Source: Octopus bimaculoides
Lineage: Eukaryota
DNA: 64,000 nucleotides
Assembly: GCF_001194135.2 (NCBI RefSeq)
Contig: NC_069004.1
Span: 1,041,610 to 1,105,609, forward strand
Reading direction: 5' to 3'
Shown here: in pieces, positions 4,401-24,414 of the stretch
Layout of the letters: the number at the start of each line of letters is the position of its first letter
How positions within the stretch are numbered: position 1 is the stretch's first letter
The notes under the pieces: generated by a model
Databases searched by the model: none
Told to the model about the DNA's origin: nothing
What the model saw: the letters and a program-made list of their open reading frames with translations, nothing else
Made by a program: the position numbers and the translations under genes

Positions 4401-5092
4401 ATACAAAAATGAAATCAAAAAAGGTTATTAGAAAAGTCATTGAAAAAAAAAAAAAAACCGAGGAGATATGTGAAGATATATTTATATGAAGAATTATCAG
4501 GAAGGTTTTTTTGGCAGTTGAGAGACGAGTCACTCAGTCCATTCTAGAGTTGCTAGAAAGCTCAAATCAGCCAAGATGAGTGGTGCATTGGAAAGGGGCC
4601 TACTCACTGTTTGAATGATAATCCCTCCTTCGTTGGTTATTTCCTTGTTCTATTGAGAAATGAAAATTTTATGTTAAAGCTTTGCCAACTGGAAAAAAAA
4701 TATTCCATGATTGATTGAGTCAAGTGTTAGTGAGGGTTAGTTTAGAATGGAATTAATTTACTGCCGGCTGCTGGCATATCTTACGTGGCTGGAATTTCGT
4801 TGTTCAATTCATCCTTTGCCAGAGATAGAGAAAGAGAGACAGGAAGCGAGAAAGAAAGAGAGAGAGAGAGAGAGAAAGAGAGCGAGCGAGTGAAAGAATA
4901 GGTTTGTTTTTGTATTACACAGTCACATCGTTAACGTTGTCCCTAACTGAGGGAAATTATACTTCAATTAATTTAGCCTAGAAGTATCAACTACAGTGAG
5001 GGTGGCATTGCTCAGATCGTTAGCTTATTACCTATGATATTTCAGCATTTAATGGTCAATGACAGCAATTTATGGTGAAATAAAAGTTTGTT

Positions 5093-8536: not shown

Positions 8537-8723
8537 CACTCAATGTAAAGCTAGAGTCTTGCTGGTTGCGAGCACCGCTTTGAGTAAGTGGTCGAGCATG
8601 GAATGGTTGAAGATCATGTAAAATAGGATTATCTGACTTCCTTGTGTCAAATTCCTCAGGAGCCATTATTTCAACAACAGTTCCAGTGTATGGGTCACGT
8701 TCAACTTTTTTGGGCATCCTTGC
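8537..8723 (-). CDS. DPYS: DPYS/CRMP exon (187 nt): ARMPKKVERDPYTGTVVEIMAPEEFDTRKSDNPILHDLQPFHARPLTQSGARNQQDSSFTLS(G)
   Basis: ctttag|GCA ... AGT G|gtaag. Has the VxRxPYxG and RNxQDSSFxLS C-terminal motifs. The 5' phase cannot be checked because of the gap. Confidence 0.88.
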
Positions 8724-9454: not shown

Positions 9455-9950
9455 NNNNNNNNNNNNNNNNNNNNNNNNNNNNNNNNNNNNNNNNNNNNNN
9501 NNNNNNNNNNNNNNNNNNNNNNNNNNNNNNNNNNNNNNNNNNNNNNNNNNNNNNNNNNNNNNNNNNNNNNNNNNNNNNNNNNNNNNNNNNNNNNNNNNNN
9601 NNNNNNNNNNNNNNNNNNNNNNNNNNNNNNNNNNNNNNNNNNNNNNNNNNNNNNNNNNNNNNNNNNNNNNNNNNNNNNNNNNNNNNNNNNNNNNNNNNNN
9701 NNNNNNNNNNNNNNNNNNNNNNNNNNNNNNNNNNNNNNNNNNNNNNNNNNNNNNNNNNNNNNNNNNNNNNNNNNNNNNNNNNNNNNNNNNNNNNNNNNNN
9801 NNNNNNNNNNNNNNNNNNNNNNNNNNNNNNNNNNNNNNNNNNNNNNNNNNNNNNNNNNNNNNNNNNNNNNNNNNNNNNNNNNNNNNNNNNNNNNNNNNNN
9901 NNNNNNNNNNNNNNNNNNNNNNNNNNNNNNNNNNNNNNNNNNNNNNNNNN
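9455..9950. other. Assembly gap truncating a DPYS exon
   Basis: N-run. Other large gaps at 35919-36111, 41330-41880, 46516-47325 and 60927-61254. Confidence 0.99.
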
Positions 9951-10022
9951 AACACGTCCATATACAGTTTCAGCAAAGGGTGGCATAGGAATGAAACGAC
10001 CGAGCCCTTGAGATACTTTAAG
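9951..10022 (-). CDS. DPYS: DPYS/CRMP exon, 3' end lost in the gap: LKVSQGLGRFIPMPPFAETVYGRV...
   Basis: tttcag|CTT. The frame runs into the N-gap at 9455-9950. Contains the GxGRFIPxxPF motif. Confidence 0.93.
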
Positions 10023-11105: not shown

Positions 11106-11285
11106 CTGGCCTTCATCTAAGACGACATGTCCTCCCATTATGACATATAATGGTACTCCATGGCAAACCATACCCTCAAAAATATTAAAATCACAGGCCT
11201 GGTGATGAGTTTTAGCAGAGATTGTACGAGTTGCATTTGGATCCCAAATAACAAGATCAGCATCTGAACCTACAGCGATTCGCCC
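11106..11285 (-). CDS. DPYS: DPYS/CRMP exon (180 nt): [60 protein letters not shown]
   Basis: tttag|GGG ... CAG|gtaag. Contains the [15 protein letters not shown] motif. Confidence 0.97.
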
Positions 11286-11820: not shown

Positions 11821-11904
11821 CTTCTGGGGATAAATATTAAATATCTTAGCTGCGTTAGTACTGGTTACTGCCACAAATCTACATGGATCCATTTTCCCAG
11901 ATTG
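11821..11904 (-). CDS. DPYS: DPYS/CRMP exon (84 nt): [28 protein letters not shown]
   Basis: ttctag|CAA ... AAG|gtaag. Phase 0 to 0. Confidence 0.97.
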
Positions 11905-12257: not shown

Positions 12258-12399
12258 CACACCCTTTTCCCAAATCACAGACATTCTGTCTTCCACTCCA
12301 TTAACTCCATTAGGTATGCGTCTAAAATCATCTTTACCCAATGCCTTTTGTTCAGCATTAAATGTACAGTTATCGGTACCTGTACATTGTAGGTCATTG
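12258..12399 (-). CDS. DPYS: DPYS/CRMP exon (142 nt): [47 protein letters not shown]
   Basis: ttctag|C ... GTG|gtatgt. Contains the catalytic Asp (GTDNCTF) and [12 protein letters not shown]. Confidence 0.97.
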
Positions 12400-12665: not shown

Positions 12666-12822
12666 TTTGATAAAAGATCCATCAAATAACCTGGGGTAGT
12701 TGTATCTGCTCTAAGGGGTGGACTCATAACATGACCAGCAGCATGGCGCCAACATTTGTTCCAATAATGTGTTCCATCCGTACCTAAACTAGCTGCTATT
12801 GGTTCACCAAAAACTATTTTTC
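12666..12822 (-). CDS. DPYS: DPYS/CRMP exon (157 nt): [52 protein letters not shown]
   Basis: aacag|GA ... AA|gtaat. Phase 1 to 2. Contains GEPI...SPPLR. Confidence 0.97.
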
Positions 12823-12951
12823 CTGTTAACATTAAAAAACAAAAGAGTACATTAAACTTAATCAAAACAAGAAAGAAATACATATTTATGGAAAATCCAT
12901 TAAGTTCAATCCATGAAGTGCTAAGTTAAAATAACCCTCCACGTAGCTTGG

Positions 12952-13098
12952 TTAATATAAATACATCATTGAAAGGCAAATTCACTGTGGCATTTGTCCA
13001 GAAGTAACATCTCTAATGTACAAAGCATATCCAGAAGAGATATTATCTCTGGACACATGCCACAGCAAATTTGCCTTTCAATGATGTATTTACATTAA
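12952..13098. repeat. Near-perfect inverted repeat (51-bp arms, 45-nt loop), MITE-like
   Basis: Arm 12952-13002 versus the reverse complement of 13048-13098 is 47/51 identical. Both ends are TTAA. Confidence 0.9.
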
Positions 13099-15577
13099 AT
13101 ATGACATAGAGGGAGCAATTAAGTTATGAATTTAATAATATATGTGCAGATATGATTTACAATGATATATTCTTTACAAGGATATATTATAGTTAAGAGA
13201 AATTCAAAATTTAGGTTTTTTTTTTACAAAATCAGTTAATATAGTTTGTATATGTTACATTCAAATAAACATCAGATGTATATACATACACTTTACATCC
13301 ACGCACATACAATCATACAAACACATGTATGCACACACATAACATACATACAAATGTCTACCACATGGTCCTGTAGATGCATTCACATATATGTGAATGC
13401 ACCTACATGACCATGGTGTATACACACGCATACATCACATGTATGCAAACACACACTACATTATATGCAAACACCCCCACCCACCTACATCCCACCACAC
13501 ATAAACACCCTGGCATAGAATTTCAAAAACACACACCAACACGTATACGAAAACATACTTACACATATGCACATGCAAATATACTTACACACAAATACAT
13601 TTCAGTACACACACACACACACCCTTGAATACTTATCTAAGATTTATTTCAAAACAAGATATAGCAATGAAAATTGATAATAAATAATAGAATTCGTAGA
13701 CAAAAAAGAAAAAGAAAAAAAAGGTGGGAGGAGTGGGGGAGGATGCAACACAAGGCAGACATTTTGATGTCATTCACAGTGGACCAATACTAATAACTTA
13801 CTGCAATGAAAATGGTGGACTAATTATACATTTGCACAAGTCTACCAAGGTCATAGTATAAATATAAACTTGCATCTACACATTATATTAACATATATTA
13901 CACATTACATTAGCATATATAATAATATGCTGGACCTACTGACTGTTGGGTTTCTAAGAACCAATGTTCCCTAATTGTCTAACAGATCTATGCCGGCCTT
14001 TTCAAATATGGGCAGAATTCATTCAGAAGGATTTTTACAGTTTCTTTCCATCTAATTTCACTCATCGATCTTGAGACAGCCCTGGGTTATGAAGTACCAA
14101 ACATCAGGATCAAAATTAGGACCTCCTGAATGTAAAGTAAACTTTTTTTTTTTTGTAGTAGCTCTAGAAGTGGAGATAATTATAATGACTCAACAATTTA
14201 TGCCATGCATGGTACTTGATGTATTTGTTACATTTTGTCATAGTTGACCGGCACAAACCAAGTTTATCAATGTATTTCATTTGTAGTTAGCCTACGGTTC
14301 ACTGGTTTACAGTATTATTTCCCTGACTTGTTCAACCACCACCACCACCACCATTTTTGAATACTAAATATCTTCCTACATAAAAGAGTGAACTAGTAAG
14401 GCAGTGGGAGGAGCTAATAACCTTCAGACACTCAAATATGTTGGGGTTTTTTTTTCTTCTTCTCATCAACAAAAATGATCTTTAAGCATTCCTTATGGTT
14501 GAATAAATCATTTTGCTGTGTTTTGTACAATTCTCTAAATTCAGTCATGTTTTGCTAATAAACTGAAGGGAATGTCACCATTGCCACAAATGCGTGTGAT
14601 ATTTATTCCTCACCCACAATTACGTAAGCAATATTCTAGTGTATTACATGGTGTTTTGTTAGAGGTTAGGAATATAATATGATTTTTCTTGTGAAGAGAA
14701 ATCGGTACTTCTGAGCCCTGTTTTTGCCTCTGCAGAGGACATGGAGAGTTTACCATGAGATATTGTGAAAGCTGGCCTTGTTTCCTTCAAATGTATATTT
14801 TTGTTTTTTTATTAACCTCTTCATTCCACTTGAAATCAGTCTACACTTAAGAAAGACATTTTTTGCTATTAATGATAAAAAGCAAAACAAAAAAAATCAA
14901 CCATGCTTTTATTATTGAATAAAAGAGTTATCTAATCTTCATTTGCTACCATTTCCAGCTATTTTGTTATGTCCCTTAACACTTGAAGGAAGTCCTTTGC
15001 CAGAAAAGAAATCAGAGCTCAACAAATAAATATTATATTACTAAAGAATTAACTGAATGTACAGTCTGTTGGCACAAAACTGTTTGTTATCATAAAATGT
15101 AACACTTGAAAAGTGTTATGGTACGTGATAACGTGATTATAATTTGGCATAACTCACATTATGTTATCATGTACTGCAAACACTTGAAGAGAGCTTACTG
15201 CCAAAATATCAGAACTTAAATCCGAAAATACGATGTCTATTACTCAGAAATTATGAAAACATTACAGAATCTGTCAGTGCAGCACAGTTAGTGCAATGGA
15301 ATCACCGTTTCCTTGTTGACCTTGCCTAATGATAAGTATGGAAGATCCAAGACGATAAAATAGTAAAATACGAGAAAGAACTTGATTAACGAGTCTTTTT
15401 TTCTCGAGAGAGTTTATACCTAGGATTAAATTATACAATCTTTTAAAACAGTAGGGTGTGTACAGAAGGTTGAAAGACCATGTAGAAGCTCTTTCAGAGG
15501 ACTGGATTGTTGTTTAGCTCTGAGCCAGATCTGATTGAACAGACTTTTGATCAAGGGCATTCAAACTCTGACCATCC

Positions 15578-15613
<36 letters not shown>

Positions 15614-15989
15614 GCTGGCAGAATTGTGAGCACACCTGAAAAAATGTTAAGCAGCATTTTTTCCAGTTTTACATTCTGAGTTCTGCCGAGGTTGACTTTG
15701 CCTTTCATTCTTTCGGGGTCCATAAAATAAATACCAGTTGAGTACTGGGGGTCAATGTAATCAACTAACCCGCTTTCCTCAAATTTCAGCCCTTGTGCCT
15801 ATTGTAGAAAGGATTATTATAACAGGGCCTGTCAGTGAGCAAAACAGTTGTGAGCAAAGGGCAGAGTCATTAGAATAAGGGAGAGATTTTGCTTTGCAGT
15901 ATTCGTTGGGACTGTCGGGGCTCAGAATTCGTGTCCTGCTGGGGTCAGTTTCACTATTTCATCTGGGCAGAGGAGAAGACCCAGAAGGA

Positions 15990-16225
15990 TTGCAGGGGGG
16001 GAAAAAATGTGGTGGGGACAAGAAGCAACTCCAGAGAGGTGCAAGAAAAGGATGGCCAGATAAGAGATTCCCAAAAGATTGTGGGGTGGAAGAGGACTGG
16101 ACTAAGAAGGGTAGGATCTGAGATGCACAGCCAGGGGGAGGAGGACAGGGTGAATCAGATAAGGTCTGGGTGGAGGGGTTATACAGCTAGCTAGTTCAGA
16201 GAAGAGGTCGTTGGGGTCAGTGTGA
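15990..16225 (-). mobile_element. Degenerate 3' end of a CR1/L2-like LINE ORF2
   Basis: Minus-strand peptide ...FSELASCITPPPRP...HP..VQ...LW resembles the CR1/L2 ORF2 C-terminus (SELAxCxPPP). Recognised by pattern only. Confidence 0.45.
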
Positions 16226-16531
16226 ATGTGCAAGTGTAGCAGTAGTGGTGGTGGTGGGGCAAACTTTAATTTAAAACCTCCCTCCCTCCACCATTTCAGT
16301 TCATTAAGTAGAAAAATAAATAAATAAAACAAAAGCAAACAGACATTACCTGTATTAATTAATAATAATAATAATAATAATATAACAGTTACAACAACTA
16401 CAGAGCACACAGTATATATACATATATAATATGCACACACAAATATATACAGCATCAGAAGCTGGCATCATTCAATTGCTGTCTTCAGGCAGCAGTAGCA
16501 GCAGCATCATCTAACTGAGCATTAGGCCTAC

Positions 16532-16652
16532 CTGATCTGCGAGCATCGGCTATTGTTTCAGCAGATGCTTTACTCATAACTTTAACCACATACAGTGGGC
16601 AGTTGGCCTGGTTGGCGATGGTGAGTGCACGTTGTACAGCTTCTTTTTCAAC
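16532..16652 (-). CDS. DPYS: Mutually exclusive exon B (CRMP type, Lys): [41 protein letters not shown]
   Basis: 121 nt, phase 0 to 1. Acceptor attgtag|GTT, donor G|gtaggc. Open frame, 24/40 aa identical to exon A, with His replaced by Lys. Not in the ORF track. Confidence 0.93.
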
Positions 16653-16935
16653 CTACAATATGAATGTCCCTTGTGAAAGCAGGATATATCGAACAGAAAA
16701 GTACACAGCCCCACACACACACACACACATACACATGTGTGTGTGTGTGTGTGCGTGCGTGTGTGTACAAATAGGAAGAGAGGAAAGAAGAAAGAGCATT
16801 TATTGAAACAAAATTATGTAAATTGCAAGAGAAACAATAGTAAAAGTGAGTAGCAGAAATTATTTCAGATCAAATTTAAAGGTTTAGATCAAATTTTAAA
16901 CGATTCAAAACAGGTTTTTCTTGGGGTTGTAATTA

Positions 16936-16971
<36 letters not shown>

Positions 16972-17972
16972 AGAAATTACACAAGAAAGGAAAAACATCT
17001 ATGGTTGATGTGAGCATGTATGTATTGATGTGTATGTGTGTACCTATCTATTTAATAAATAGACACTGTGGCTTAACCATAGAGTCTAAACAGGGAAGGT
17101 GAATATATATATATATATATAGGGTATGAGGGGGTTTAGTTCACTGGTGATCTAAATGAATAGGTACACTGAGTAAGTACCTTGGTTTTATGTCCTTTTC
17201 ATCTGTATGTGTGTACATATGATATTTTCAATTTTTTTTTTTACATTAGTAATAATAACAATAATTTCAGCAGAGATGACAGTCAGATAAGCCATGTTTA
17301 AATTAATAAGAAAAATAGAATATTTTTTACTACTATATCTACTATTGTCAGCTGGTACAATAAACATAAATTGCTGAAAAAAATAAATAACAGAAAACCC
17401 GGTTTATCAGGGTTAAGAGATTAGAGTCAAGGTTTATAAACAAGGTGGAAAAAGATTGATAAAAAAGATCATCATCACTCTAGCCACCACCACCACCATA
17501 AACTTTGAAACTAGAAAATTACTTGCACCAAATTAAAACATTAAAAGTGTCTGAAAAACTGTTCACTATTTCACCAATTATTATTTGGTTTTAAAAACAA
17601 AAATTGAAGGATGTATCTTAAAAAAAAAAATCTTCCCCATCTTTTCCAAGACAATATTTGGACTTCCTTAATTTTTAACATCTCACTTTTTATGCTTGCA
17701 TGAATTAGACAGCATTTGTTGAGGCAGATTCTTCATTGGCTTGAAATCAATCCTTCCCATCATCATTTGATGTCCACTTTTCCATGCTTGCAAGGCCCAG
17801 ATGAAATCTGCTGAGGCAAATTTTCTATGGCTGGATGCCCTTCCTGTTGCCAACACTCATCTGTTTCCAAGCAAGGTAATATTTACCATGGCCAGACATA
17901 TTTTTAGAGAAGACGGGAAACATATTTACAACCACCATGTGATATCAGGACAAGAGTCCACACATACATATA

Positions 17973-18197
17973 CAGTGGAACCTTGACGTATGAACACAGA
18001 AACAGGCAACAACAGTTGGCGACAAGCAGGGAGTATCAGCAGGAAGAGAGTGTCGGTTGCTGTTTGGGTTTTGCTCAGGGCACATTCCAGGCTTTCTCTT
18101 GAATTTCCTGACGAGAAAAATAGTTTTAGTTTACAAACATTTCGGGTGACAAACGACCTTCAGGAACAAATTGAATTCATATATCGAGGTTCCACTC
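17973..18197. mobile_element. Tigger/pogo-like MITE
   Basis: TA|cagtggaaccttgacgtatgaa ... ttcatatatcgaggttccactc gives about 22-nt imperfect terminal inverted repeats. Confidence 0.75.
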
Positions 18198-18482
18198 TCT
18201 ATTTATTTATGATGGGGCTTCTTTCAGTTTTCATCAACCAAATCTACTCACAAGGCTTTGGTTTGCCTGGAATGAAGACATTTACCCAATGTGCCATGAA
18301 GAGGGACCAAATCTGAGACCACATAGGAAGCAATGCCTGCACTTATAAAGTGGTAAAATAGGAAAGATGGGGGGGAATTGGTGAAAATTGTGAAATTAAT
18401 TTTCTTTCTGAAATTTTGTTTGGAAAAAAAAAATTGTGCAACAAATTTTCTAGTGATCAAATTCTCAAGTCATAGGACAGAC

Positions 18483-18603
18483 CTTCCTTCCGTGCCAATG
18501 AAACACTATCAGCAGCAGTCTTGCTCATTACATGAACAACATAGAGGGGGCAGTTAGCCTGATCGGCAATCATAATCGCTCGGTCTGTTGCTTCAACTTC
18601 CAC
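18483..18603 (-). CDS. DPYS: Mutually exclusive exon A (DHPase type, His): [41 protein letters not shown]
   Basis: 121 nt, phase 0 to 1. Acceptor ttttctacaag|GTG, donor G|gtctgt. Keeps the Zn-ligand His in VVHVMSK. Confidence 0.95.
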
Positions 18604-19699
18604 CTTGTAGAAAATTGAAAAACAAAAATAAAGAAAAGAGGCATGCAAATGCAACAAAGCCACAAAACATTCAGCGATGAACAAAATAAAATGGAAAACA
18701 AAAGGTGACATAAAGTGATAAACATAGCAAACACAGGTGCACAGAGGTGGAAGCATCTATATGTATGTATATATGTTGGGTAACTGATGATGTGTGGCAT
18801 GACTGCATAATATCTATACACGCTATGTAATCCTTTCAGCAGTTTACTGAAACATGCATATGTTCTGTAAAGCTCTGAATACCATACCTGTTTTCTGCAT
18901 ATGATTTCTCTATGTATAAAATTTAATTGGTATTCATATATAAACACTTTGAGTTCTCAAAATAATGGAAGTTTTTGTGAAGAAAATTTTAGGCTTTTAA
19001 GTTTCATTGCAGATTCTCACGACAATCCCATGCCATTATCCAATCCTACTCTGCCACAGTCCAGTACTAGATTATCATTGTCCAAGACTAGTTTATTATT
19101 GTCTATACTAGATTACAACTGTTCACTCACAGAATAGCATTGTGTAATCTCAGAGTTCCTATAAAGTGATTGTGTTCAGATGAGACAAAATGAAACTACA
19201 AGAGCTGATGACTGAATACCGAAACACCATCATACCCCCCCCCCCACTCTTCCTTCTTTCGTCACAAAGGTCAAAGCTGTGATTCCTCAGTTGTTGCTCT
19301 TGTACAGCTCTTCTTCAGAACTGTAGTTTTTAGTGAGCAGCATTTCAAAAGTGAAGAAACGAATATATATCTACTGAATTTAATGATTTACAAGGAGTCC
19401 CGTTACCTTCCATAATTTTCAGATCTTTATCTAAATTATTTTTCTTTTAATTGCCAAGATTTTAAAACCCATACCAACGCTATCTGAGGGTTAAAAGAAA
19501 AGATACTGCTTCTTGGAAGTTAATCATCTTTATCAATACTTAAAACATAAAAATCTTTTGAGAGACTTCTCAGATATTGCAAGAAAATATTACTAGCAAT
19601 AATCCACCCTGATAGACATCAAGGGTGGATTTTAAAAACTGCAATGTTGAGGTGGAATATTTTGAATAGTGATTTGGAGTTGGAGCCTCAGTTCAATGT

Positions 19700-20075
19700 T
19701 GTCTACAACCTTGTTTTGGCAACTCTTGCGATGATGCTAGTTGTGCTGTTCCTTTGGTTCCATCAGTGACTTGGAGGAGCAGGGATATGCTGCATGGGCA
19801 ACAACCGGTGCTTCACACCATACTGCCTAGGTTAGTCCACATTACCCTGTAGGGAGCACAGAGCTGGTTTCCTGGTTTCTCTGGCATATATATCCCTCTC
19901 TGGAAATGGCAACAGTCATTCACAGGGTCACTCATTTTTGTCAGCTGAGTGGACTGGAGTAACATGAAATGAAGCATTTTGCTCAAGAACACAACACATT
20001 GCCTGGTCCAGGAAATGAAACCACAATCTTATGATCGTGAGTCCAACACCCTAACCTCTAAGCCATGTGCCTCCA
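19700..20075 (-). mobile_element. tRNA-derived SINE (family D here)
   Basis: Head gtggaggcacatggcttagaggttagggtgttggactc...ggtttcatttcc followed by gtgttcttgagcaaaatgcttcatttc. Related copies near 6310-6535, 23820-23960, 27195-27320 and 30187-30340. Confidence 0.75.
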
Positions 20076-21027
20076 CTGCCTCAGATTGGCTCCTATCAAA
20101 CACTCTACACTGGACAGACAGAACTGATCGACACAATGAAGAGCAAGGCCTACAATCTGAGAATGATTTCCTCCCAACAGTGTTGGAGGTCTTGAAAGAC
20201 ACCATGGGTGATGCAGGGCTTTCTTTTCTGACTCAGCAAATAAAAACATAAGACACTCAGTCAAAAAACTCAAATAGCCTGGCTTTAAAACTAGGGGTGA
20301 TAACAGATTCCTGAGGGGTTCCTGAGAGTTTACTAGGGAAAAGGATTTAGCTGGCATGCTTATGGGATATACTTAAACAGTATGGAGGTAGTTGCTTATG
20401 TACCTTGCTTTGTAATGACCATACGAAGAAGGTCAATTGGACAAATGAGTTCCAAGCAGTGGCTGGAGACATTTGTCATGCCGAGTGCAAGTGCACTGGA
20501 GAGAAAAAAAAAAAATAATAAAAGCAAGACGAAGGCCAGAGTAGGTGTTAAAATCTGCTACACAAGTAGAAACACAACAAAAATGGATGGTGCATGCTTG
20601 GTTAAAAACTTAAGGGTTACAAAACACAAATGAATATGCTGTGTGGTAAACAGACCACTAGAATTCACCTCAGATTGAGAAAAGTGGATGTTAAAACCAA
20701 TAACAATGGCAGCAATGAAGATGATGATGAAATGTGTTGTTGGAGATAAGGAAATGTGGTGAAATATTTTTAACAAAACAAATTGGTGATTCAGTATTGA
20801 TTTCTGGCAAAAATTATTTTTTTTTTAGCATTAATACTTAACTTTTAAAAATAATGAATTTGGAGGGATTTAGTAAAATAACCAACTTTTCCATTCATTG
20901 GGATATTAAGCTGGTGTTTGGGATATCACAGAATATTCTTAGATGCAAATTATGGTGGAAGGCATTTAATTTGAATATAAATAAATTTTTAAAACTCCAG
21001 TTTTGTATCAAAGAACCAGAAGCAGTA

Positions 21028-21393
21028 CAAGTGCCCCATTGTATGATAATTTGCTGTAAGAGCTGAGACTTGTGCAAATTTTTGTCTTGAAGTACGAGCG
21101 GAAATCTGGAGTACGAGCACACAAATCGTCCCATCTTTAAGGTGATTCAGTTAATAAAACCAGTTTACATATGTCTTTTGCATTCTCTTTCTTTATAATT
21201 GTCATTTCAATTGTAACTACACCTTTTCTGTTTTAAAACCCATAAAAAATTATTTTGAGTGGTTTTTAGGGGCTGGAACAGATTAATTATATTTTAGTTA
21301 ATTTCAATGGGGAAAATTGATTTGTAAAACGAGTAAATCACAAGACGAATTCAGTCATGGAATGAATTAAAATCGTACTGTGAGGTAACTCTG
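21028..21393. mobile_element. Tigger/pogo-like non-autonomous element
   Basis: TA-flanked, and ends ...ggggctggaacagattaat...caatggggaaaattgatt...gaattaaaatcgtactgtgaggtaactctg|ta. Confidence 0.6.
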
Positions 21394-22464
21394 TATTAGC
21401 TTGCTTGTAAATAGGTGAAGGGCATCCAGCCATAGAAAGTCTGCCTCAATAAACCTCACCTGACCCATGTAAACATGGAAATGTGGACACTAAATAATGG
21501 TGATGATGATTCACTGGCACATTTTAATCAGTGTACTTAATAAATACTGGTTTCTTAGATTACAGCAGATGACCACATATTAAAGGGTGAGTGGCATGGC
21601 TGGCTGGTTGGCAAGACTGACTTGGATCTATGACATATACATTTTATAGACTCTTGGAGAGGCAAAAGACAAAGATGATCTGGGTGGAATTTGATCTGAG
21701 TGAAGAAGGATGAAACAGAAATGGAACAAGACCTCTTCTTCTCATTCCACAGCCTTAATACCATTCTCGAAGAGTGTTACACCAGCCAGACATTCTAACT
21801 ATGAGTACGTATTTTGTTTGTTTTTATTTATTGTATTTTAGTATTGGTTTTTATGGGGTGGTGTGGGGGAGAAGAGCAATAATAAAATTAGTTATAGTAC
21901 CATTTTGTTAGCCTCAAGGATTTCAGCATTAACAGGATGAGATTTAAAGATTCTCAAGAGATTAGTGTTGTAACTAAGAAACACACACACACAGCCAATC
22001 AATAAAAGAGCCGCGTTTAAGCATTTGGAAACAAAAGTGCTTTGAGTGAAGAAGAAGAAGAAAAAAAAAAGGCACCAAGGTGTTGTAGCTTGCTTTGAAG
22101 TATTGTGAGGAAAAAATGAAATAAAATAATGAACGTGAAAAGTCTAAAGTTTAATAACCATCATATTTCCAGTACAAAGGTCCATCATCAAGAGCAAACA
22201 GTCAAGAGGTGTTAGTCTATACAGTAACAACTCTGATGGTGGGAGCAATGGGCAACCGTCAGCACCACCAGCCTCAATACAGGTAGTTCTATCACAGCTT
22301 CTACCAGCAACTTACCATTGCTCTCACTGTGATCTGTGGCCACCCTTTTGGGTATGGCTACTGCTGCTGCTACTATGATTGCCCATTGCAACCACCACTA
22401 CTCACAGGGACACTGCAGGGGTTGCTGCCTTCACAGCGATCAACATGACTGGTTCTGTATAGAT

Positions 22465-22612
22465 TAGGCATGGGCAACCTTTTTCAAGAACTGAGCCACA
22501 CAAGACATGGCTTAGCATCAGGAAGGCTGCACTATTAACAAAAATCCAAGGTCGTTTTTTGGTTAGGTTTGTCATTCAGAAAGATTCATGGACCACAGGT
22601 TGTCCATGACTA
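22465..22612. mobile_element. hAT-type MITE
   Basis: TIRs taggcatgggcaacct / aggttgtccatgacta (14/16 match). TSD not preserved. Confidence 0.6.
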
Positions 22613-22625
22613 ACACGCTATGGAC

Positions 22626-22883
22626 CAGTGGTTCTCAATAGGGGTCCACATGACCTTTAGGGGGTCAAAACAAGATTCTATTGTTAATATTTTTCTGCAA
22701 TAAATTGATTATACTTCTACGGCACACAAAATATTTTAATGTTTTTTTTTTATTACAATTCCCAATAATAATTAATTATGATAATATAAAAGGAGTTTTT
22801 AAATGTGGAATGGTTATTAGGGTCCACCTGAGTAGAATGGAGATCAAACAGGTCCTTAGGTAAGAAATGGTTGAGAAGCATTG
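22626..22883. mobile_element. hAT-Charlie-like MITE
   Basis: TIRs cagtggttctcaa / ttgagaagcattg. Flanks ctatggac / gtctagac (5/8 match; gtctagac fits the Charlie target consensus). Confidence 0.7.
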
Positions 22884-24345
22884 GTCTAGACCAACGCTTC
22901 CTGACTGTTTACTTCTGATGATGGGAATTTGTGCCTGAAAATCATGAAGGTTATTAAGCACACCATGTGAAAACTATAAAGTCTAGTGTGCAGTAGTGAT
23001 GGTGATGATGATGATAGTAACAAATGAATATATTACCAATTATAATGAATTACGAGAAAAAAATACAAACATAGATATAAAAAAAAAAAACAAATTAACT
23101 TCAAGAAAAAAAAAAGGTAACAGATGATAAATTACAAGAAGTAGAGTAAATTTTAAGACAAATTCATTGAAAAGATTAATTAACATCAAATATTTAAATA
23201 TCTTGTTTGGAATGATTGGAGATGAAAAATATCAAGAAATTTTAGCTTAATGACATCGTTAAATAATACTAATGCGGGTTATATATAAATAAATGAATCT
23301 GTTAGAATTTCTGATAATGAGCTTTCGGTTGTTTAAATCAACTGAGTCTGTATCTCACAGACCCATGCAACCTTAACGTAATCTTCAGATGGAGTCGGCA
23401 TGCCAGAGTGACAAGGCAGGACTTTTGGATTACGAGTGGAATCCTACAATCTATCAGATGAGATTCCATACAGCTTCCACTTAGCTGATCTTACTTGGAA
23501 GGCTTGGATGGACCCTGTTGCAATGGTAAAAGGAACTCACAAAGATGCCATGCAGAGGGGTTGAAGCCTTGTCCTGGTGATTACAAAACAAACATCTTAA
23601 CCAGTTGGCCATCTACTACAATTCCTGTTAGCATAATTGAATACTTCTGTCAAGGCTTTCTCTCTATCCCTCATTTTCATAATTTGGAACTGTGAGTTTT
23701 CCTCGACTTTTTAGACCTAAATACACGCATGACAGCAGCCATTTCATTTAAGCTTTTGAGTAAGATTGAGAAAATGGAAACTGAGGAGACTATGGTTTCT
23801 TACTTTCAAGAGAAGGGTGTTATCCCTAAAAGAATATAGATTCATGATGGTAGTTTTGATTCCTGGACTAAACAGTAAGTTGTGTTCTTGGGTGAAACAC
23901 TTCATTTGACATTGCACTAGTCCACTCTACTGGCAAAAATAGACACTCCTGCAATGGACCAGCATACATAAAATACTATAGTGGTCAGGGAATAATTAAT
24001 GATTCTAACACAGGTGCAAGGGCACAAATTTTGTTGGGGACAGGACATAGTCAACGACATCTCTGCCCCATCGTCCATCATCAGTACTTTATTTCGCCAG
24101 CCATGGAAGGATGACAGGCGAAACTAATATCAATGTGATTTAGATTCAGAACATAAATGGTTATGACAAAATACCATGAAGTATTTTGTCTGGTTCTTTC
24201 TCCATTCCTGTCACTTATTATCCTTGCTTTTAGAGTTTAATTGAAAAATACCAAATTGAAGTTCTTTGATATTTTTCATTGAAAAGAAAAGAAAATTTGC
24301 CAAAATATTTAGAGAGAGATTTTAAAATGAAGACAGATGACTTAC

Positions 24346-24414
24346 CTCTTCAGGTCGACACATTTCATGTCCTTCTGGCCCTGTGATACCCATAGCGATC
24401 AATTCCTTAGATTT
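24346..24414 (-). CDS. DPYS: DPYS/CRMP exon (69 nt): [23 protein letters not shown]
   Basis: ttacag|AAA ... GAG|gtaag. Phase 0 to 0. Contains the GITGPEGH motif. Confidence 0.96.

What the first reader, a model, noticed from the sequence alone, without database searches (positions are those of the whole stretch)
16532..18603. Mutually exclusive 121-nt exons switch one gene between active dihydropyrimidinase and a CRMP-like pseudoenzyme
Seen: two exons of identical length and phase (0 to 1), 24/40 aa identical, separated by a 1830-nt intron. Including both (242 nt) or neither shifts the frame, so a full-length protein needs exactly one. Exon A reads EATDRA...VVHVMSK and exon B reads EAVQRA...[17 protein letters not shown]. 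Known: the His in xHVMSK is a Zn ligand of DHPase (His248 in human DPYS, from recall), and vertebrate CRMPs carry Lys here (CRMP2 ...IANQTNCPLYITKVMSK) and lack DHPase activity. Drosophila CRMP is reported to make DHP and CRMP isoforms from paralogous alternative exons E9a/E9b (recalled, Morris et al. 2012 Genetics). Inference: a mollusc uses the same one-gene enzyme/pseudoenzyme switch, so it is either ancestral to protostomes or convergent. The B isoform would keep the other five metal ligands and lose only this one.
Basis: partly seen in the sequence, partly recalled or inferred. Interest (0 to 1): 0.9.

Follow-up and report, generated by a model that had tools for sequence, protein, structure and literature searches.

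The report
Octopus DHPase/CRMP mutually exclusive exon switch
One octopus gene carries two interchangeable 121-base exons, one keeping and one replacing a zinc-binding histidine, so it can probably make either a pyrimidine-degrading enzyme or a likely inactive CRMP-like protein; the fly has a similar switch and both octopus forms are already in public databases.

Summary
On the minus strand, exons 18603-18483 (A, ...YVVHVMSK) and 16652-16532 (B, ...YVVKVMSK) are both 121 nt, phase 0 to 1, AG/GT-flanked, 24/40 aa identical and 1830 nt apart. Using both or neither gives an immediate stop.

The gene is the Octopus bimaculoides DPYS/CRMP homologue (100% match to RefSeq proteins). Both isoforms are already public: UniProt A0A0L8HH40 (A) and A0A0L8HI31 (B), XP_052832447.1 (A) and XP_014772445.1 (B), and O. 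sinensis X2/X6 (A) versus X1/X5 (B). The His is the DHPase zinc ligand His248, and CRMP1-4 chains carry Lys there. Exon A hits DHPase best in the PDB; exon B hits CRMP2 best.

The same 121-nt pair occurs in bivalves, a chiton, a brachiopod, an annelid and hemichordates. In Saccoglossus the order is reversed. Pancrustaceans use a longer exon with a different 5' boundary. Amphioxus and Nematostella have one copy in the genes examined.

So the one-gene His/Lys switch is real in molluscs and widespread. Single versus repeated origin is unresolved: the 40-aa tree has no deep support. I did not test tissue specificity or loss of activity. This is a new member of a known kind, of moderate interest.

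The parts
18483..18603 (-). Alternative exon A (121 nt, phase 0 to 1), the DHPase type. It encodes [40 protein letters not shown] and carries the zinc ligand equivalent to His248.
   Evidence: It is 100% identical to XP_052832447.1 and A0A0L8HH40. Its best PDB hits are DHPases. Splice signals are suboptimal: acceptor aag and donor gtctgt, the only donor in the gene without a purine at +3.
16532..16652 (-). Alternative exon B (121 nt, phase 0 to 1), the CRMP type. It encodes [40 protein letters not shown], with Lys in place of the zinc-ligand His.
   Evidence: It is 100% identical to XP_014772445.1 and A0A0L8HI31. Its best PDB hits are CRMP2 chains (51 bits, against 43 for human DPYS). It has the weakest polypyrimidine tract in the gene (9/20 pyrimidines).
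16653..18482 (-). The 1830-nt intron between exons A and B. It is bounded by exon A's weak donor and exon B's weak acceptor.
   Evidence: It is far too long for steric exclusion, and neither end has a U12-type signal.
24346..24414 (-). Constitutive upstream exon (69 nt), [23 protein letters not shown]. Its donor (gtaagt) splices to either A or B.
12666..12822 (-). Constitutive downstream exon (157 nt), (G)[51 protein letters not shown]. It is the shared acceptor for A and B.
29287..29397 (-). Constitutive exon carrying the His-x-His metal ligands ([10 protein letters not shown]; equivalents of His67 and His69).
   Evidence: ligand list from PMC2999344
27557..27699 (-). Constitutive exon carrying the carboxylated-Lys equivalent (NSFK) and the His192 equivalent (MVHAENG).
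12258..12399 (-). Constitutive exon carrying the Asp326 equivalent (TGTDNCTF).
34084..34178 (-). First core exon present in the window ([11 protein letters not shown]...). The alternative first exons (long and short N-termini) are not found in the window.
   Evidence: The O. sinensis gene spans about 260 kb.
32686..32759 (-). Constitutive exon (74 nt).
28484..28648 (-). Constitutive exon (165 nt).
11821..11904 (-). Constitutive exon (84 nt).
11106..11285 (-). Constitutive exon (180 nt).
9954..10022 (-). Constitutive exon (69 nt). Its donor directly abuts the assembly gap at 9455-9950.
8537..8723 (-). C-terminal tail exon (ARMPKKVERDPY...SSFTLS). The 3' boundary is approximate.
4606..4650 (-). 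Cassette microexon of about 45 nt (EQGNNQRRRDYHSNS), used in XP_052832447.1 but not in XP_014772445.1. Boundaries are approximate.

Best explanation
The window holds the core of the single Octopus bimaculoides DPYS/CRMP gene. An old tandem duplication of its 121-nt exon created two homologous, mutually exclusive exons.

Shown:
- Splicing 24346 to 18603 and 18483 to 12822 gives isoform A, which has all six binuclear-zinc ligands of dihydropyrimidinase.
- Splicing 24346 to 16652 and 16532 to 12822 gives isoform B. It differs at 16 residues, including His to Lys at the His248 site, which is the state seen in CRMP1-4 chains.
- Both isoforms are deposited for this species and for relatives.

Inferred:
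- Mutual exclusion is enforced mainly by reading frame. Because 121 is not a multiple of 3, double inclusion or double skipping creates an immediate stop codon, and the transcript would be removed by nonsense-mediated decay.
- Exclusion is helped by the A-to-B intron being bounded by exon A's weak donor (gtctgt) and exon B's weak acceptor (poor polypyrimidine tract). That makes each exon dependent on trans-acting factors.
- Isoform A is the pyrimidine-catabolic enzyme.
- Isoform B has lost, or strongly reduced, its beta-metal site and its activity, and serves a CRMP-like cytoskeletal or signalling role, probably in neurons as in Drosophila.

The same exon pair exists across Lophotrochozoa and in hemichordates. 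The octopus case is therefore one instance of a widespread invertebrate arrangement, which vertebrates handle with separate DPYS and CRMP genes.
For: Identity of the gene: full-length isoform A matches human DPYS 2vr2 at 773 bits, against about 680 bits for CRMPs. Both isoforms pass the TIGR02033 dihydropyrimidinase model and Pfam Amidohydro_1.

The ligand: His248 is a metal ligand and CRMP1 has Lys254 there (PMC2999344). His69 and His248 are not conserved in CRMPs, which lack DHPase activity (PMC7325199).

Exon-level reciprocal best hits: exon A hits DHPase best and exon B hits CRMP2 best.

Use of both exons:
- A0A0L8HH40 and A0A0L8HI31 differ at 16 positions, all within residues 237-274.
- O. 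sinensis X2 and X1 differ at 15 positions, all within residues 326-363.
- Intron-free transcript contigs from another cephalopod carry exon A (P0292) or exon B (P0155, P0291, P0287).

Constraint: synonymous sites are saturated while the protein sequence is conserved. Between octopus and that other cephalopod, exon B is 39/41 identical and exon A is 29/41, against 91% for the rest of the protein (Fisher p = 0.0006 for exon A).

Breadth:
- Annotated His/Lys isoform pairs with identical boundaries occur in Sinanodonta, Mytilus, Mya, Liolophura, Lingula and Ptychodera.
- Genomic tandem 121-nt exons with AG/GT occur in Capitella and Saccoglossus.

Fly precedent: exon 9a is non-neuronal, carries the His and supports catabolism; exon 9b is neuronal and does not (PMC8652244).
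Against: - No expression data were available, so tissue specificity is unknown.
- No enzymology exists for a DHPase with only His248 changed to Lys. Isoform B keeps five of six ligands and an intact alpha-metal site, so residual or altered activity is possible.
- RefSeq XP_ isoforms are computational models. The A-type transcript contig P0292 begins inside exon A, so only the junction from exon A to the downstream exon is directly seen there.
- Exon A evolves faster than the rest of the protein within cephalopods. That could mean relaxed constraint on the enzymatic isoform.
- Nonsense-mediated decay and the splice-site-strength argument are inferred from sequence, without a scoring model or experiment.
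Confidence: 0.8

Rival explanations
1. Isozyme switch rather than enzyme/pseudoenzyme switch. Both isoforms would be active cyclic amidohydrolases. Exon B, with Lys at the beta-metal site and a net charge change from -2 to +2 over the 40 residues, would tune metal content, substrate range, regulation or tetramer partners.
For: Isoform B retains five of six ligands, including the whole alpha site and the carboxylated Lys. Both isoforms score alike on the dihydropyrimidinase equivalog model (604 versus 601 bits). The other residues lost in vertebrate CRMPs (the His69 and Asp326 equivalents) are kept, because they are encoded by shared exons.
Against: The His248 position is His in all DHPase and hydantoinase chains aligned. 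Lys at this site occurs in CRMP1-4 chains, which have no DHPase activity. In the fly, the isoform without the His does not support pyrimidine catabolism. Replacements at this site in other animals vary (Lys, Arg, Gln, Pro, Asn). That pattern fits loss of a ligand better than a new catalytic role.
Confidence: 0.15
2. One of the two exons is a non-functional duplicate (pseudo-exon) that annotation pipelines include by homology, so only one isoform matters biologically.
For: RefSeq isoforms are predictions. Exon A diverges faster than the rest of the protein among cephalopods (29/41). Exon B has a poor polypyrimidine tract.
Against: Both exons keep open frames, AG/GT sites and conserved protein sequence despite saturated synonymous sites. 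Both are conserved in O. sinensis (A 39/41; B identical over the exon). Spliced transcript contigs with each exon exist in another cephalopod. The same pair is retained in at least five phyla.
Confidence: 0.04
3. On origin: the octopus pair, the hemichordate pair and the arthropod pair arose by independent tandem duplications. This would be convergent recruitment of the same zinc-ligand exon, not inheritance from one bilaterian ancestor.
For: - Arthropod alternative exons have a different 5' boundary (after ANQ, the intron position seen in Nematostella and amphioxus) and span about 77 aa.
- Exon order is His then Lys in octopus, Mya and Capitella, but Lys then His in Saccoglossus.
- Only the His type was seen in the listed isoforms of nemerteans, Priapulus, horseshoe crabs and a sea urchin, and in the amphioxus and Nematostella genes examined.
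- B exons are no closer to each other across phyla than to A exons (0.6 versus 0.6).
- Other lineages reached a His-less paralogue by gene duplication: vertebrates, amphioxus (Pro) and gastropods (Pro, Gln).
Against: Lophotrochozoans and hemichordates share exactly the same 121-nt exon, phases and boundaries, and the same His to Lys change. Octopus exon B is 73% identical to human CRMP2 and hits it ahead of any DHPase. Mollusc B exons cluster together. Forty residues cannot resolve deep nodes, so absence of a B clade is weak evidence. The absences rest on annotated isoform lists and could reflect losses or unannotated exons; the Capitella B exon was unannotated.
Confidence: 0.5

Closest known systems
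Drosophila melanogaster CRMP (CG1411) exons 9a/9b (Morris et al. 2012, Genetics 191:1227; described in PMC8652244 and PMC7954323)
   Same: One gene makes a DHPase isoform and a CRMP-like isoform through a pair of paralogous, mutually exclusive exons. Only one of the pair keeps a conserved zinc-binding His. In the fly, the His isoform is non-neuronal and supports pyrimidine catabolism, while the other is neuronal.
   Different: In the arthropods I could examine (cricket, stick insect, decapods, stomatopod), the alternative exon begins about 19 codons later (…ANQ|xxCPLY…). It extends through the sequence that is a separate 157-nt exon in octopus, about 77 aa in all. The replacing residue differs: Gly in the fly (PMC7954323, which numbers it 192), Arg in the cricket, Lys in crustaceans and octopus. 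The fly sequence itself could not be retrieved here, so its equivalence to the His248 site is inferred from other arthropods.
Vertebrate DPYS versus CRMP1-5 (DPYSL) gene family
   Same: The same division appears: DHPase with His248 versus CRMPs with Lys at that site in the CRMP1-4 chains aligned (PMC2999344, PMC7325199). Octopus exon B is 30/41 identical to human CRMP2 over this segment. The CRMP-type C-terminal tail motif (…LSGAQ.DD…PPGG) is present in the octopus protein.
   Different: Vertebrates use separate genes, and CRMPs have also lost other ligands (the His69 and Asp326 equivalents). The octopus B isoform changes only the residues encoded by one exon. The tail is shared by both octopus isoforms and also occurs in cnidarian, amphioxus and sturgeon DHPase-type proteins, so it is not diagnostic of CRMPs.
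Same-architecture His/Lys exon pairs in other invertebrates (annotated isoforms of Mya, Mytilus, Sinanodonta, Liolophura, Lingula, Ptychodera; genomic pairs in Capitella and Saccoglossus)
   Same: They share identical exon boundaries (…EE|VE…G|G…), the 121-nt length where genomic DNA was examined (Capitella, Saccoglossus), and His versus Lys at the same residue. Order is His then Lys in Mya and Capitella, as in octopus.
   Different: Saccoglossus has the Lys exon first. The Capitella Lys exon is much more diverged (…PIYITKVNCQG…). My searches of the held paper library found no paper describing these pairs.
Frame-enforced mutually exclusive exons in general (for example PKM exons 9/10; surveyed in PMC7954323)
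   Same: Homologous adjacent exons of equal length, with exactly one used.
   Different: PKM exons are a multiple of 3 and rely on repressors. Here the length of 121 nt makes double inclusion or double skipping frame-breaking. No docking/selector RNA structure was found.

Membership tests
Dihydropyrimidinase (cyclic amidohydrolase, EC 3.5.2.2) | Whole-protein match to curated DHPase models and to solved DHPase structures. | tested here: met
   TIGR02033 scores 604 bits (isoform A) and 601 bits (isoform B) against a cutoff of 393. Pfam Amidohydro_1 is matched. The best PDB hit is human DPYS 2vr2 at 773 bits.
Dihydropyrimidinase (cyclic amidohydrolase, EC 3.5.2.2) | All six binuclear-metal ligands present (His67, His69, carboxylated Lys159, His192, His248, Asp326). 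| tested here: met
   Met for isoform A: DTHTH, NSFK, VHAENG, VVHVMSK and TGTDNC align to 2vr2 (ligand list from PMC2999344). Not met for isoform B, where His248 is replaced by Lys.
Dihydropyrimidinase (cyclic amidohydrolase, EC 3.5.2.2) | Hydrolysis of 5,6-dihydrouracil and 5,6-dihydrothymine. | not testable with these tools
   Needs a recombinant enzyme assay for each isoform.
CRMP-like (non-enzymatic DHPase paralogue or isoform) | Loss of one or more zinc ligands, with Lys at the His248 position. | tested here: met
   Exon B reads [12 protein letters not shown]1, CRMP2 and DPYSL3 chains have Y(I/V)TKVMSK. Only this one ligand is lost; vertebrate CRMPs lose more.
CRMP-like (non-enzymatic DHPase paralogue or isoform) | Neuronal expression and a cytoskeletal or semaphorin-signalling function. 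| not testable with these tools
   No expression or functional data were reachable. This is inferred from the fly (PMC8652244).
Mutually exclusive exon (MXE) pair | Adjacent homologous exons of equal length and phase, each with its own splice sites. | tested here: met
Mutually exclusive exon (MXE) pair | Transcripts contain exactly one of the two exons. | tested here: met
   Deposited isoform pairs differ only within the exon (16 positions in residues 237-274 for O. bimaculoides; 15 positions in residues 326-363 for O. sinensis). Transcript contigs of another cephalopod carry A or B. None of the 15 listed members of the Octopus cluster carries both exons. Raw RNA-seq junction counts were not available.
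Fly-type CRMP 9a/9b switch (orthologous exon pair) | The same exon boundaries and the same duplicated segment. | tested here: not met
   Arthropod alternative exons start after ANQ and run about 77 aa, whereas the octopus exon runs from VE… to …G (40 aa). The octopus switch works like the fly switch, but its exon pair is not demonstrably orthologous.

The most novel reading that the evidence does not exclude
The His/Lys 121-nt exon pair predates the protostome-deuterostome split. It is present with identical boundaries in molluscs, brachiopods, annelids and hemichordates. On this reading, the vertebrate DPYS and CRMP genes are the gene-duplication resolution of an ancestral splice switch between enzyme and non-enzyme. 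Arthropods would have remodelled the pair after intron changes, and several lineages would have lost it.
Probability: 0.3. Interest if true: 0.75.

Novelty: new member of a known kind. Interest (0 to 1): 0.5.

Why it matters
CRMPs are central neuronal cytoskeleton regulators, and their origin from a metabolic enzyme is a textbook case of a pseudoenzyme. Until now, as far as the held literature shows, the only described case of one gene toggling between the two states by alternative splicing is Drosophila.

An equivalent toggle at the same zinc ligand exists in octopus and, with identical exon architecture, in bivalves, a chiton, a brachiopod, an annelid and hemichordates. This shows that the single-gene solution is widespread, not an insect oddity.

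It also makes the ancestral-versus-convergent question directly testable with existing genomes and RNA-seq. Because isoform B differs from an active DHPase by a single exon, it offers a clean natural experiment on what the His248 segment contributes to catalysis and to CRMP function.

For annotation: both isoforms pass the dihydropyrimidinase equivalog model, so automated naming hides the difference.

Tried and rejected
1. Competing RNA structures (docking/selector). The inverted-repeat scan of 12823-24345 found a 95-nt pair (17749-17843 and 21417-21511) that would loop out exon A. The arm is a dispersed SINE-like repeat with at least 8 copies in the window, so it is not specific evidence. An (AC)n(GT)n hairpin-capable microsatellite lies just upstream of exon B (16693-16768). 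I noted it but did not pursue it.
2. Steric exclusion and U2/U12 incompatibility. Both are rejected: the intron is 1830 nt, and all sites are GT-AG without U12 donor motifs.
3. A second alternative exon at the His192 ligand. PMC7954323 reports the fly change as residue 192, which suggested this. All aligned animal sequences keep VHAENG, apart from gastropod paralogues with VRAENG. The window has a single copy of that exon.
4. Exon-level NJ tree, with the His/Lys column masked and 200 bootstraps. No supported deep nodes. Decapod His and Lys types group together only because their first 19 residues are constitutive.
5. Retrieving Morris et al. 2012 (PMC3416003, DOI). It is not held, so the fly exon sequences could not be compared directly.
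6. Genomic loci for Lingula, Liolophura, Mya, Gryllus, Ptychodera and Priapulus were not on record, and the O. sinensis gene was too long at about 260 kb. The Timema contig ends 1.5 kb after the His exon, so a second copy could not be assessed.
7. Short-query protein searches returned only fragments under 200 aa. The full-length query was the informative one.
Full report
OBSERVATION

Exon A runs 18603..18483. It is preceded by ...ttttctacaag and followed by gtctgtcc. Exon B runs 16652..16532. It is preceded by ...cattcatattgtag and followed by gtaggcct.
- Each exon is 121 nt.
- They translate in the same frame to [40 protein letters not shown] and [40 protein letters not shown].
- The two peptides are 24/40 identical.
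- The intron between them is 1830 nt.

I rebuilt the gene from a tblastn scan and hand-checked every junction. All thirteen junction-checked exons between 34178 and 9954 are AG/GT-flanked. With exactly one of A or B the frame is open throughout. With both, the protein ends …ARKEG*. With neither, it ends …RPEEEK*.

Only two copies of this exon exist in the window. At nucleotide level they are 62% identical. Third codon positions match at 13/40, and only 10 of the 24 conserved residues share a codon. The duplication is therefore old and both copies have been held by selection on the protein.

WHAT THE GENE IS

A full-length query built with exon B is 100% identical to XP_014772445.1, 'dihydropyrimidinase-like [Octopus bimaculoides]'. 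All exons in the window map at or near 100% to that protein and to XP_052832447.1. The window is therefore O. bimaculoides.

The alternative first exons (long and short N-termini) and the last coding exon were not found in the window. The orthologous O. sinensis gene spans about 260 kb.

Isoform A matches solved human DPYS (2vr2) at 773 bits, ahead of all CRMPs at about 680 bits. Both isoforms pass the NCBIfam dihydropyrimidinase equivalog model, at 604 and 601 bits against a cutoff of 393, and both match Pfam Amidohydro_1.

The mammalian DHPase metal ligands are His67, His69, carboxylated Lys159, His192, His248 and Asp326. CRMP1 has Lys254 at the His248 site (PMC2999344). A CRMP review states that His69 and His248 are not conserved in CRMPs, which lack activity on dihydropyrimidines (PMC7325199).

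In the octopus gene, DTHTH, NSFK, VHAENG and TGTDNC are all encoded by constitutive exons. Only the His248 equivalent sits in the alternative exon: His in A and Lys in B.

PDB alignments show YVVHVMSK or YIVHVMSK in DHPases, and Y(I/V)TKVMSK in CRMP1, CRMP2 and DPYSL3. Taken alone, exon A hits DHPase best (50 bits) and exon B hits CRMP2 best (51 bits, against 43 for DPYS). Exon B is 30/41 identical to human CRMP2. Net charge over the 40 residues moves from -2 in A to +2 in B.

ARE BOTH EXONS USED?

Yes, as far as deposited data can show, and this is already public.
- The cluster holding XP_014772445.1 contains two O. bimaculoides UniProt entries of 576 aa, A0A0L8HH40 (exon A) and A0A0L8HI31 (exon B). 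They differ at 16 positions, all within residues 237-274.
- It also holds RefSeq XP_052832447.1 (A) alongside XP_014772445.1 (B).
- O. sinensis isoforms X2 and X6 carry exon A; X1, X3, X4, X5 and X7 carry exon B. X1 and X2 differ at 15 positions, all within the exon.
- O. vulgaris and Argonauta hians entries carry exon B.

A second cluster (93% identical to octopus, a different cephalopod) consists of intron-free contigs of 1.3-2.6 kb from public read-run assemblies. These can only be spliced mRNA. P0155, P0291 and P0287 carry exon B. P0292 carries an A-type exon joined to the downstream exon.

Between octopus and that cephalopod, exon B is 39/41 identical and exon A only 29/41. The rest of the protein is 91% identical (Fisher p = 0.0006 for exon A). 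In cephalopods the Lys exon is thus the more constrained of the two.

I could not reach raw RNA-seq. Tissue specificity is therefore untested.

HOW MUTUAL EXCLUSION PROBABLY WORKS (INFERENCE)

The 1830-nt intron rules out steric exclusion. All splice sites are ordinary GT-AG.

Because 121 is not a multiple of 3, transcripts with both exons or neither carry an immediate premature stop. They would be substrates for nonsense-mediated decay.

The splice signals are also skewed.
- Exon A has the only aag acceptor in the gene and the only donor without a purine at +3 (gtctgt).
- Exon B has the poorest polypyrimidine tract, 9/20 against 13-17/20 elsewhere.
- The A-to-B intron is therefore bounded by two weak sites, which should disfavour joining A to B and make each exon dependent on regulators.
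- The Capitella A-type exon has a similar donor (AAG|gtctct).

A 95-nt inverted repeat brackets exon A, but it is a dispersed SINE-like element and not specific evidence. An (AC)n(GT)n tract 40-115 nt upstream of exon B could fold or bind repeat-binding splicing factors. I record it only as a lead.

HOW WIDESPREAD IS IT?

Annotated isoform pairs with exactly the octopus boundaries (…EE|VE…G|G…) and His versus Lys occur within single genes of these species:
- the bivalves Sinanodonta woodiana, Mytilus edulis and Mya arenaria
- the chiton Liolophura sinensis
- the brachiopod Lingula anatina
- the hemichordate Ptychodera flava

One Mya gene model even reads through both exons, His first and then Lys.

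In genomic DNA there are two confirmed tandem pairs.
- Capitella teleta has two tandem 121-nt AG/GT exons. The His type comes first. The second is a diverged Lys type (…PIYITKVNCQG…) that is absent from the annotated protein.
- Saccoglossus kowalevskii also has two tandem 121-nt exons, but with the Lys type first and the His type second.

The Nematostella and Branchiostoma genes examined have one His copy. Their intron lies after ANQ/ANR, not at EE|VE.

Pancrustaceans (Penaeus, Macrobrachium, Homarus, Oratosquilla) have His/Lys isoforms, and a cricket gene model contains His and Arg copies. There the alternative segment starts at …ANQxx|CPLY and runs about 77 aa, through what is a separate 157-nt exon in octopus. 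A stick-insect contig confirms that 234-nt exon and its boundary.

Only His types were listed for nemerteans, Priapulus, horseshoe crabs and a sea urchin.

Other lineages have separate paralogous genes lacking the His: vertebrate CRMPs, Branchiostoma lanceolatum (Pro), and gastropods (Pro or Gln, some with His192 changed to Arg).

ONE ORIGIN OR SEVERAL?

This is unresolved.

A exons are 72-77% identical across phyla. B exons are no closer to each other than to A exons, about 0.6 in both comparisons.

In a neighbour-joining tree with the His/Lys column masked, mollusc B exons cluster without support. Hemichordate B exons cluster at 81%. No deep node is supported.

Identical boundaries and order (His then Lys) in octopus, Mya and Capitella favour a single origin within Lophotrochozoa. 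The reversed order in Saccoglossus and the different exon in arthropods favour separate events. The similarity of exon B to CRMP2 and the shared 121-nt exon favour deep ancestry.

I put roughly even odds on repeated versus single origin across Bilateria.

COMPARISON WITH WHAT IS KNOWN

The closest described system is Drosophila CRMP. Its mutually exclusive exons 9a and 9b give a non-neuronal, His-containing isoform that supports catabolism, and a neuronal isoform that does not (Morris et al. 2012, as summarised in PMC8652244). An MXE survey reports the fly change as a zinc-binding His to Gly at 'residue 192' (PMC7954323).

From other arthropods I infer that the fly exon covers the His248-equivalent site but is a different, longer exon than the octopus one.

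The octopus switch therefore works like the fly switch. Its exon pair fails the test for orthology with the arthropod pair on boundaries.

Searches of the held paper library found no paper on this switch outside Drosophila, and none on octopus.

VERDICT

The single-gene His/Lys alternative is real, used and conserved. Catalytic loss and neural specificity remain inference. The link to the fly is functional analogy with a different exon architecture.
- It is not new at database level, because both isoforms are already deposited in UniProt and RefSeq.
- It is a new member of a known kind.
- The added value is the phylogenetic breadth shown here. That breadth makes the origin of the DHPase/CRMP split testable.

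Noticed in passing
window 16693-16768: An (AC)n followed by (GT)n microsatellite forms a near-perfect hairpin-capable inverted repeat (33 nt arms, 85% complementary). It lies 40-115 nt upstream of the weak acceptor of exon B. It could affect branch-point access or bind CA/UG-repeat splicing factors.
   Followed up: no
window 17749-17843 and 21417-21511: A 95-nt inverted repeat pair (77% complementary) brackets exon A. The arm is a dispersed SINE-like element with at least 8 copies across the window, so it is probably a chance arrangement of two transposon copies.
   Followed up: yes
window 4606-4650 (-): A cassette microexon of about 45 nt encodes EQGNNQRRRDYHSNS in the C-terminal tail. It is present in XP_052832447.1 and absent from XP_014772445.1. 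This is a second alternative-splicing event in the same gene.
   Followed up: partly
window 9455-9950 and eight other N runs: There are nine assembly gaps in the window. The 496-nt gap starts three bases after the gt donor of the exon ending at 9954. Sequence between that exon and the next (8723) is incomplete.
   Followed up: no
P0156 (Solemya velum) and P0195 (Mythimna separata) protein models: The Solemya model contains two tandem copies of the next exon (GxIVFGEP…LMDLL). The Mythimna model repeats the Asp326-containing exon four times. Either further tandem exon duplications exist in this gene family or these are annotation or assembly artefacts.
   Followed up: no
P0182, P0187, P0201, P0202, P0205, P0213 (gastropods); P0427, P0430, P0431 (Branchiostoma lanceolatum): These are separate paralogous genes with Pro at the His248 position. 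Five of the six gastropod entries (all but P0182) also have His192 changed to Arg. Aplysia-type proteins have Gln at the His248 position. The His-less state has thus been reached by gene duplication in some lineages and by alternative exons in others.
   Followed up: partly
C-termini of P0154, P0214, P0212, P0246 and others: The tail motif usually regarded as CRMP-type (R[ND]L[HQ].S.F.LSG.Q.DD…R…PPGG) is present in Nematostella, amphioxus, hemichordates, octopus and sturgeon DPYS, but not in the teleost or coelacanth DPYS checked. It appears ancestral to the DHPase/CRMP gene and not CRMP-specific.
   Followed up: partly
L004 4501-4621 (Capitella teleta): An intact 121-nt Lys-type exon (SEVDAALRCVTYADLAKCPIYITKVNCQGVADVISKARRA) lies between the annotated His-type exon and the next exon. 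It is not part of the deposited Capitella protein. Absence of a Lys isoform from annotation is therefore not evidence that the exon is absent.
   Followed up: partly
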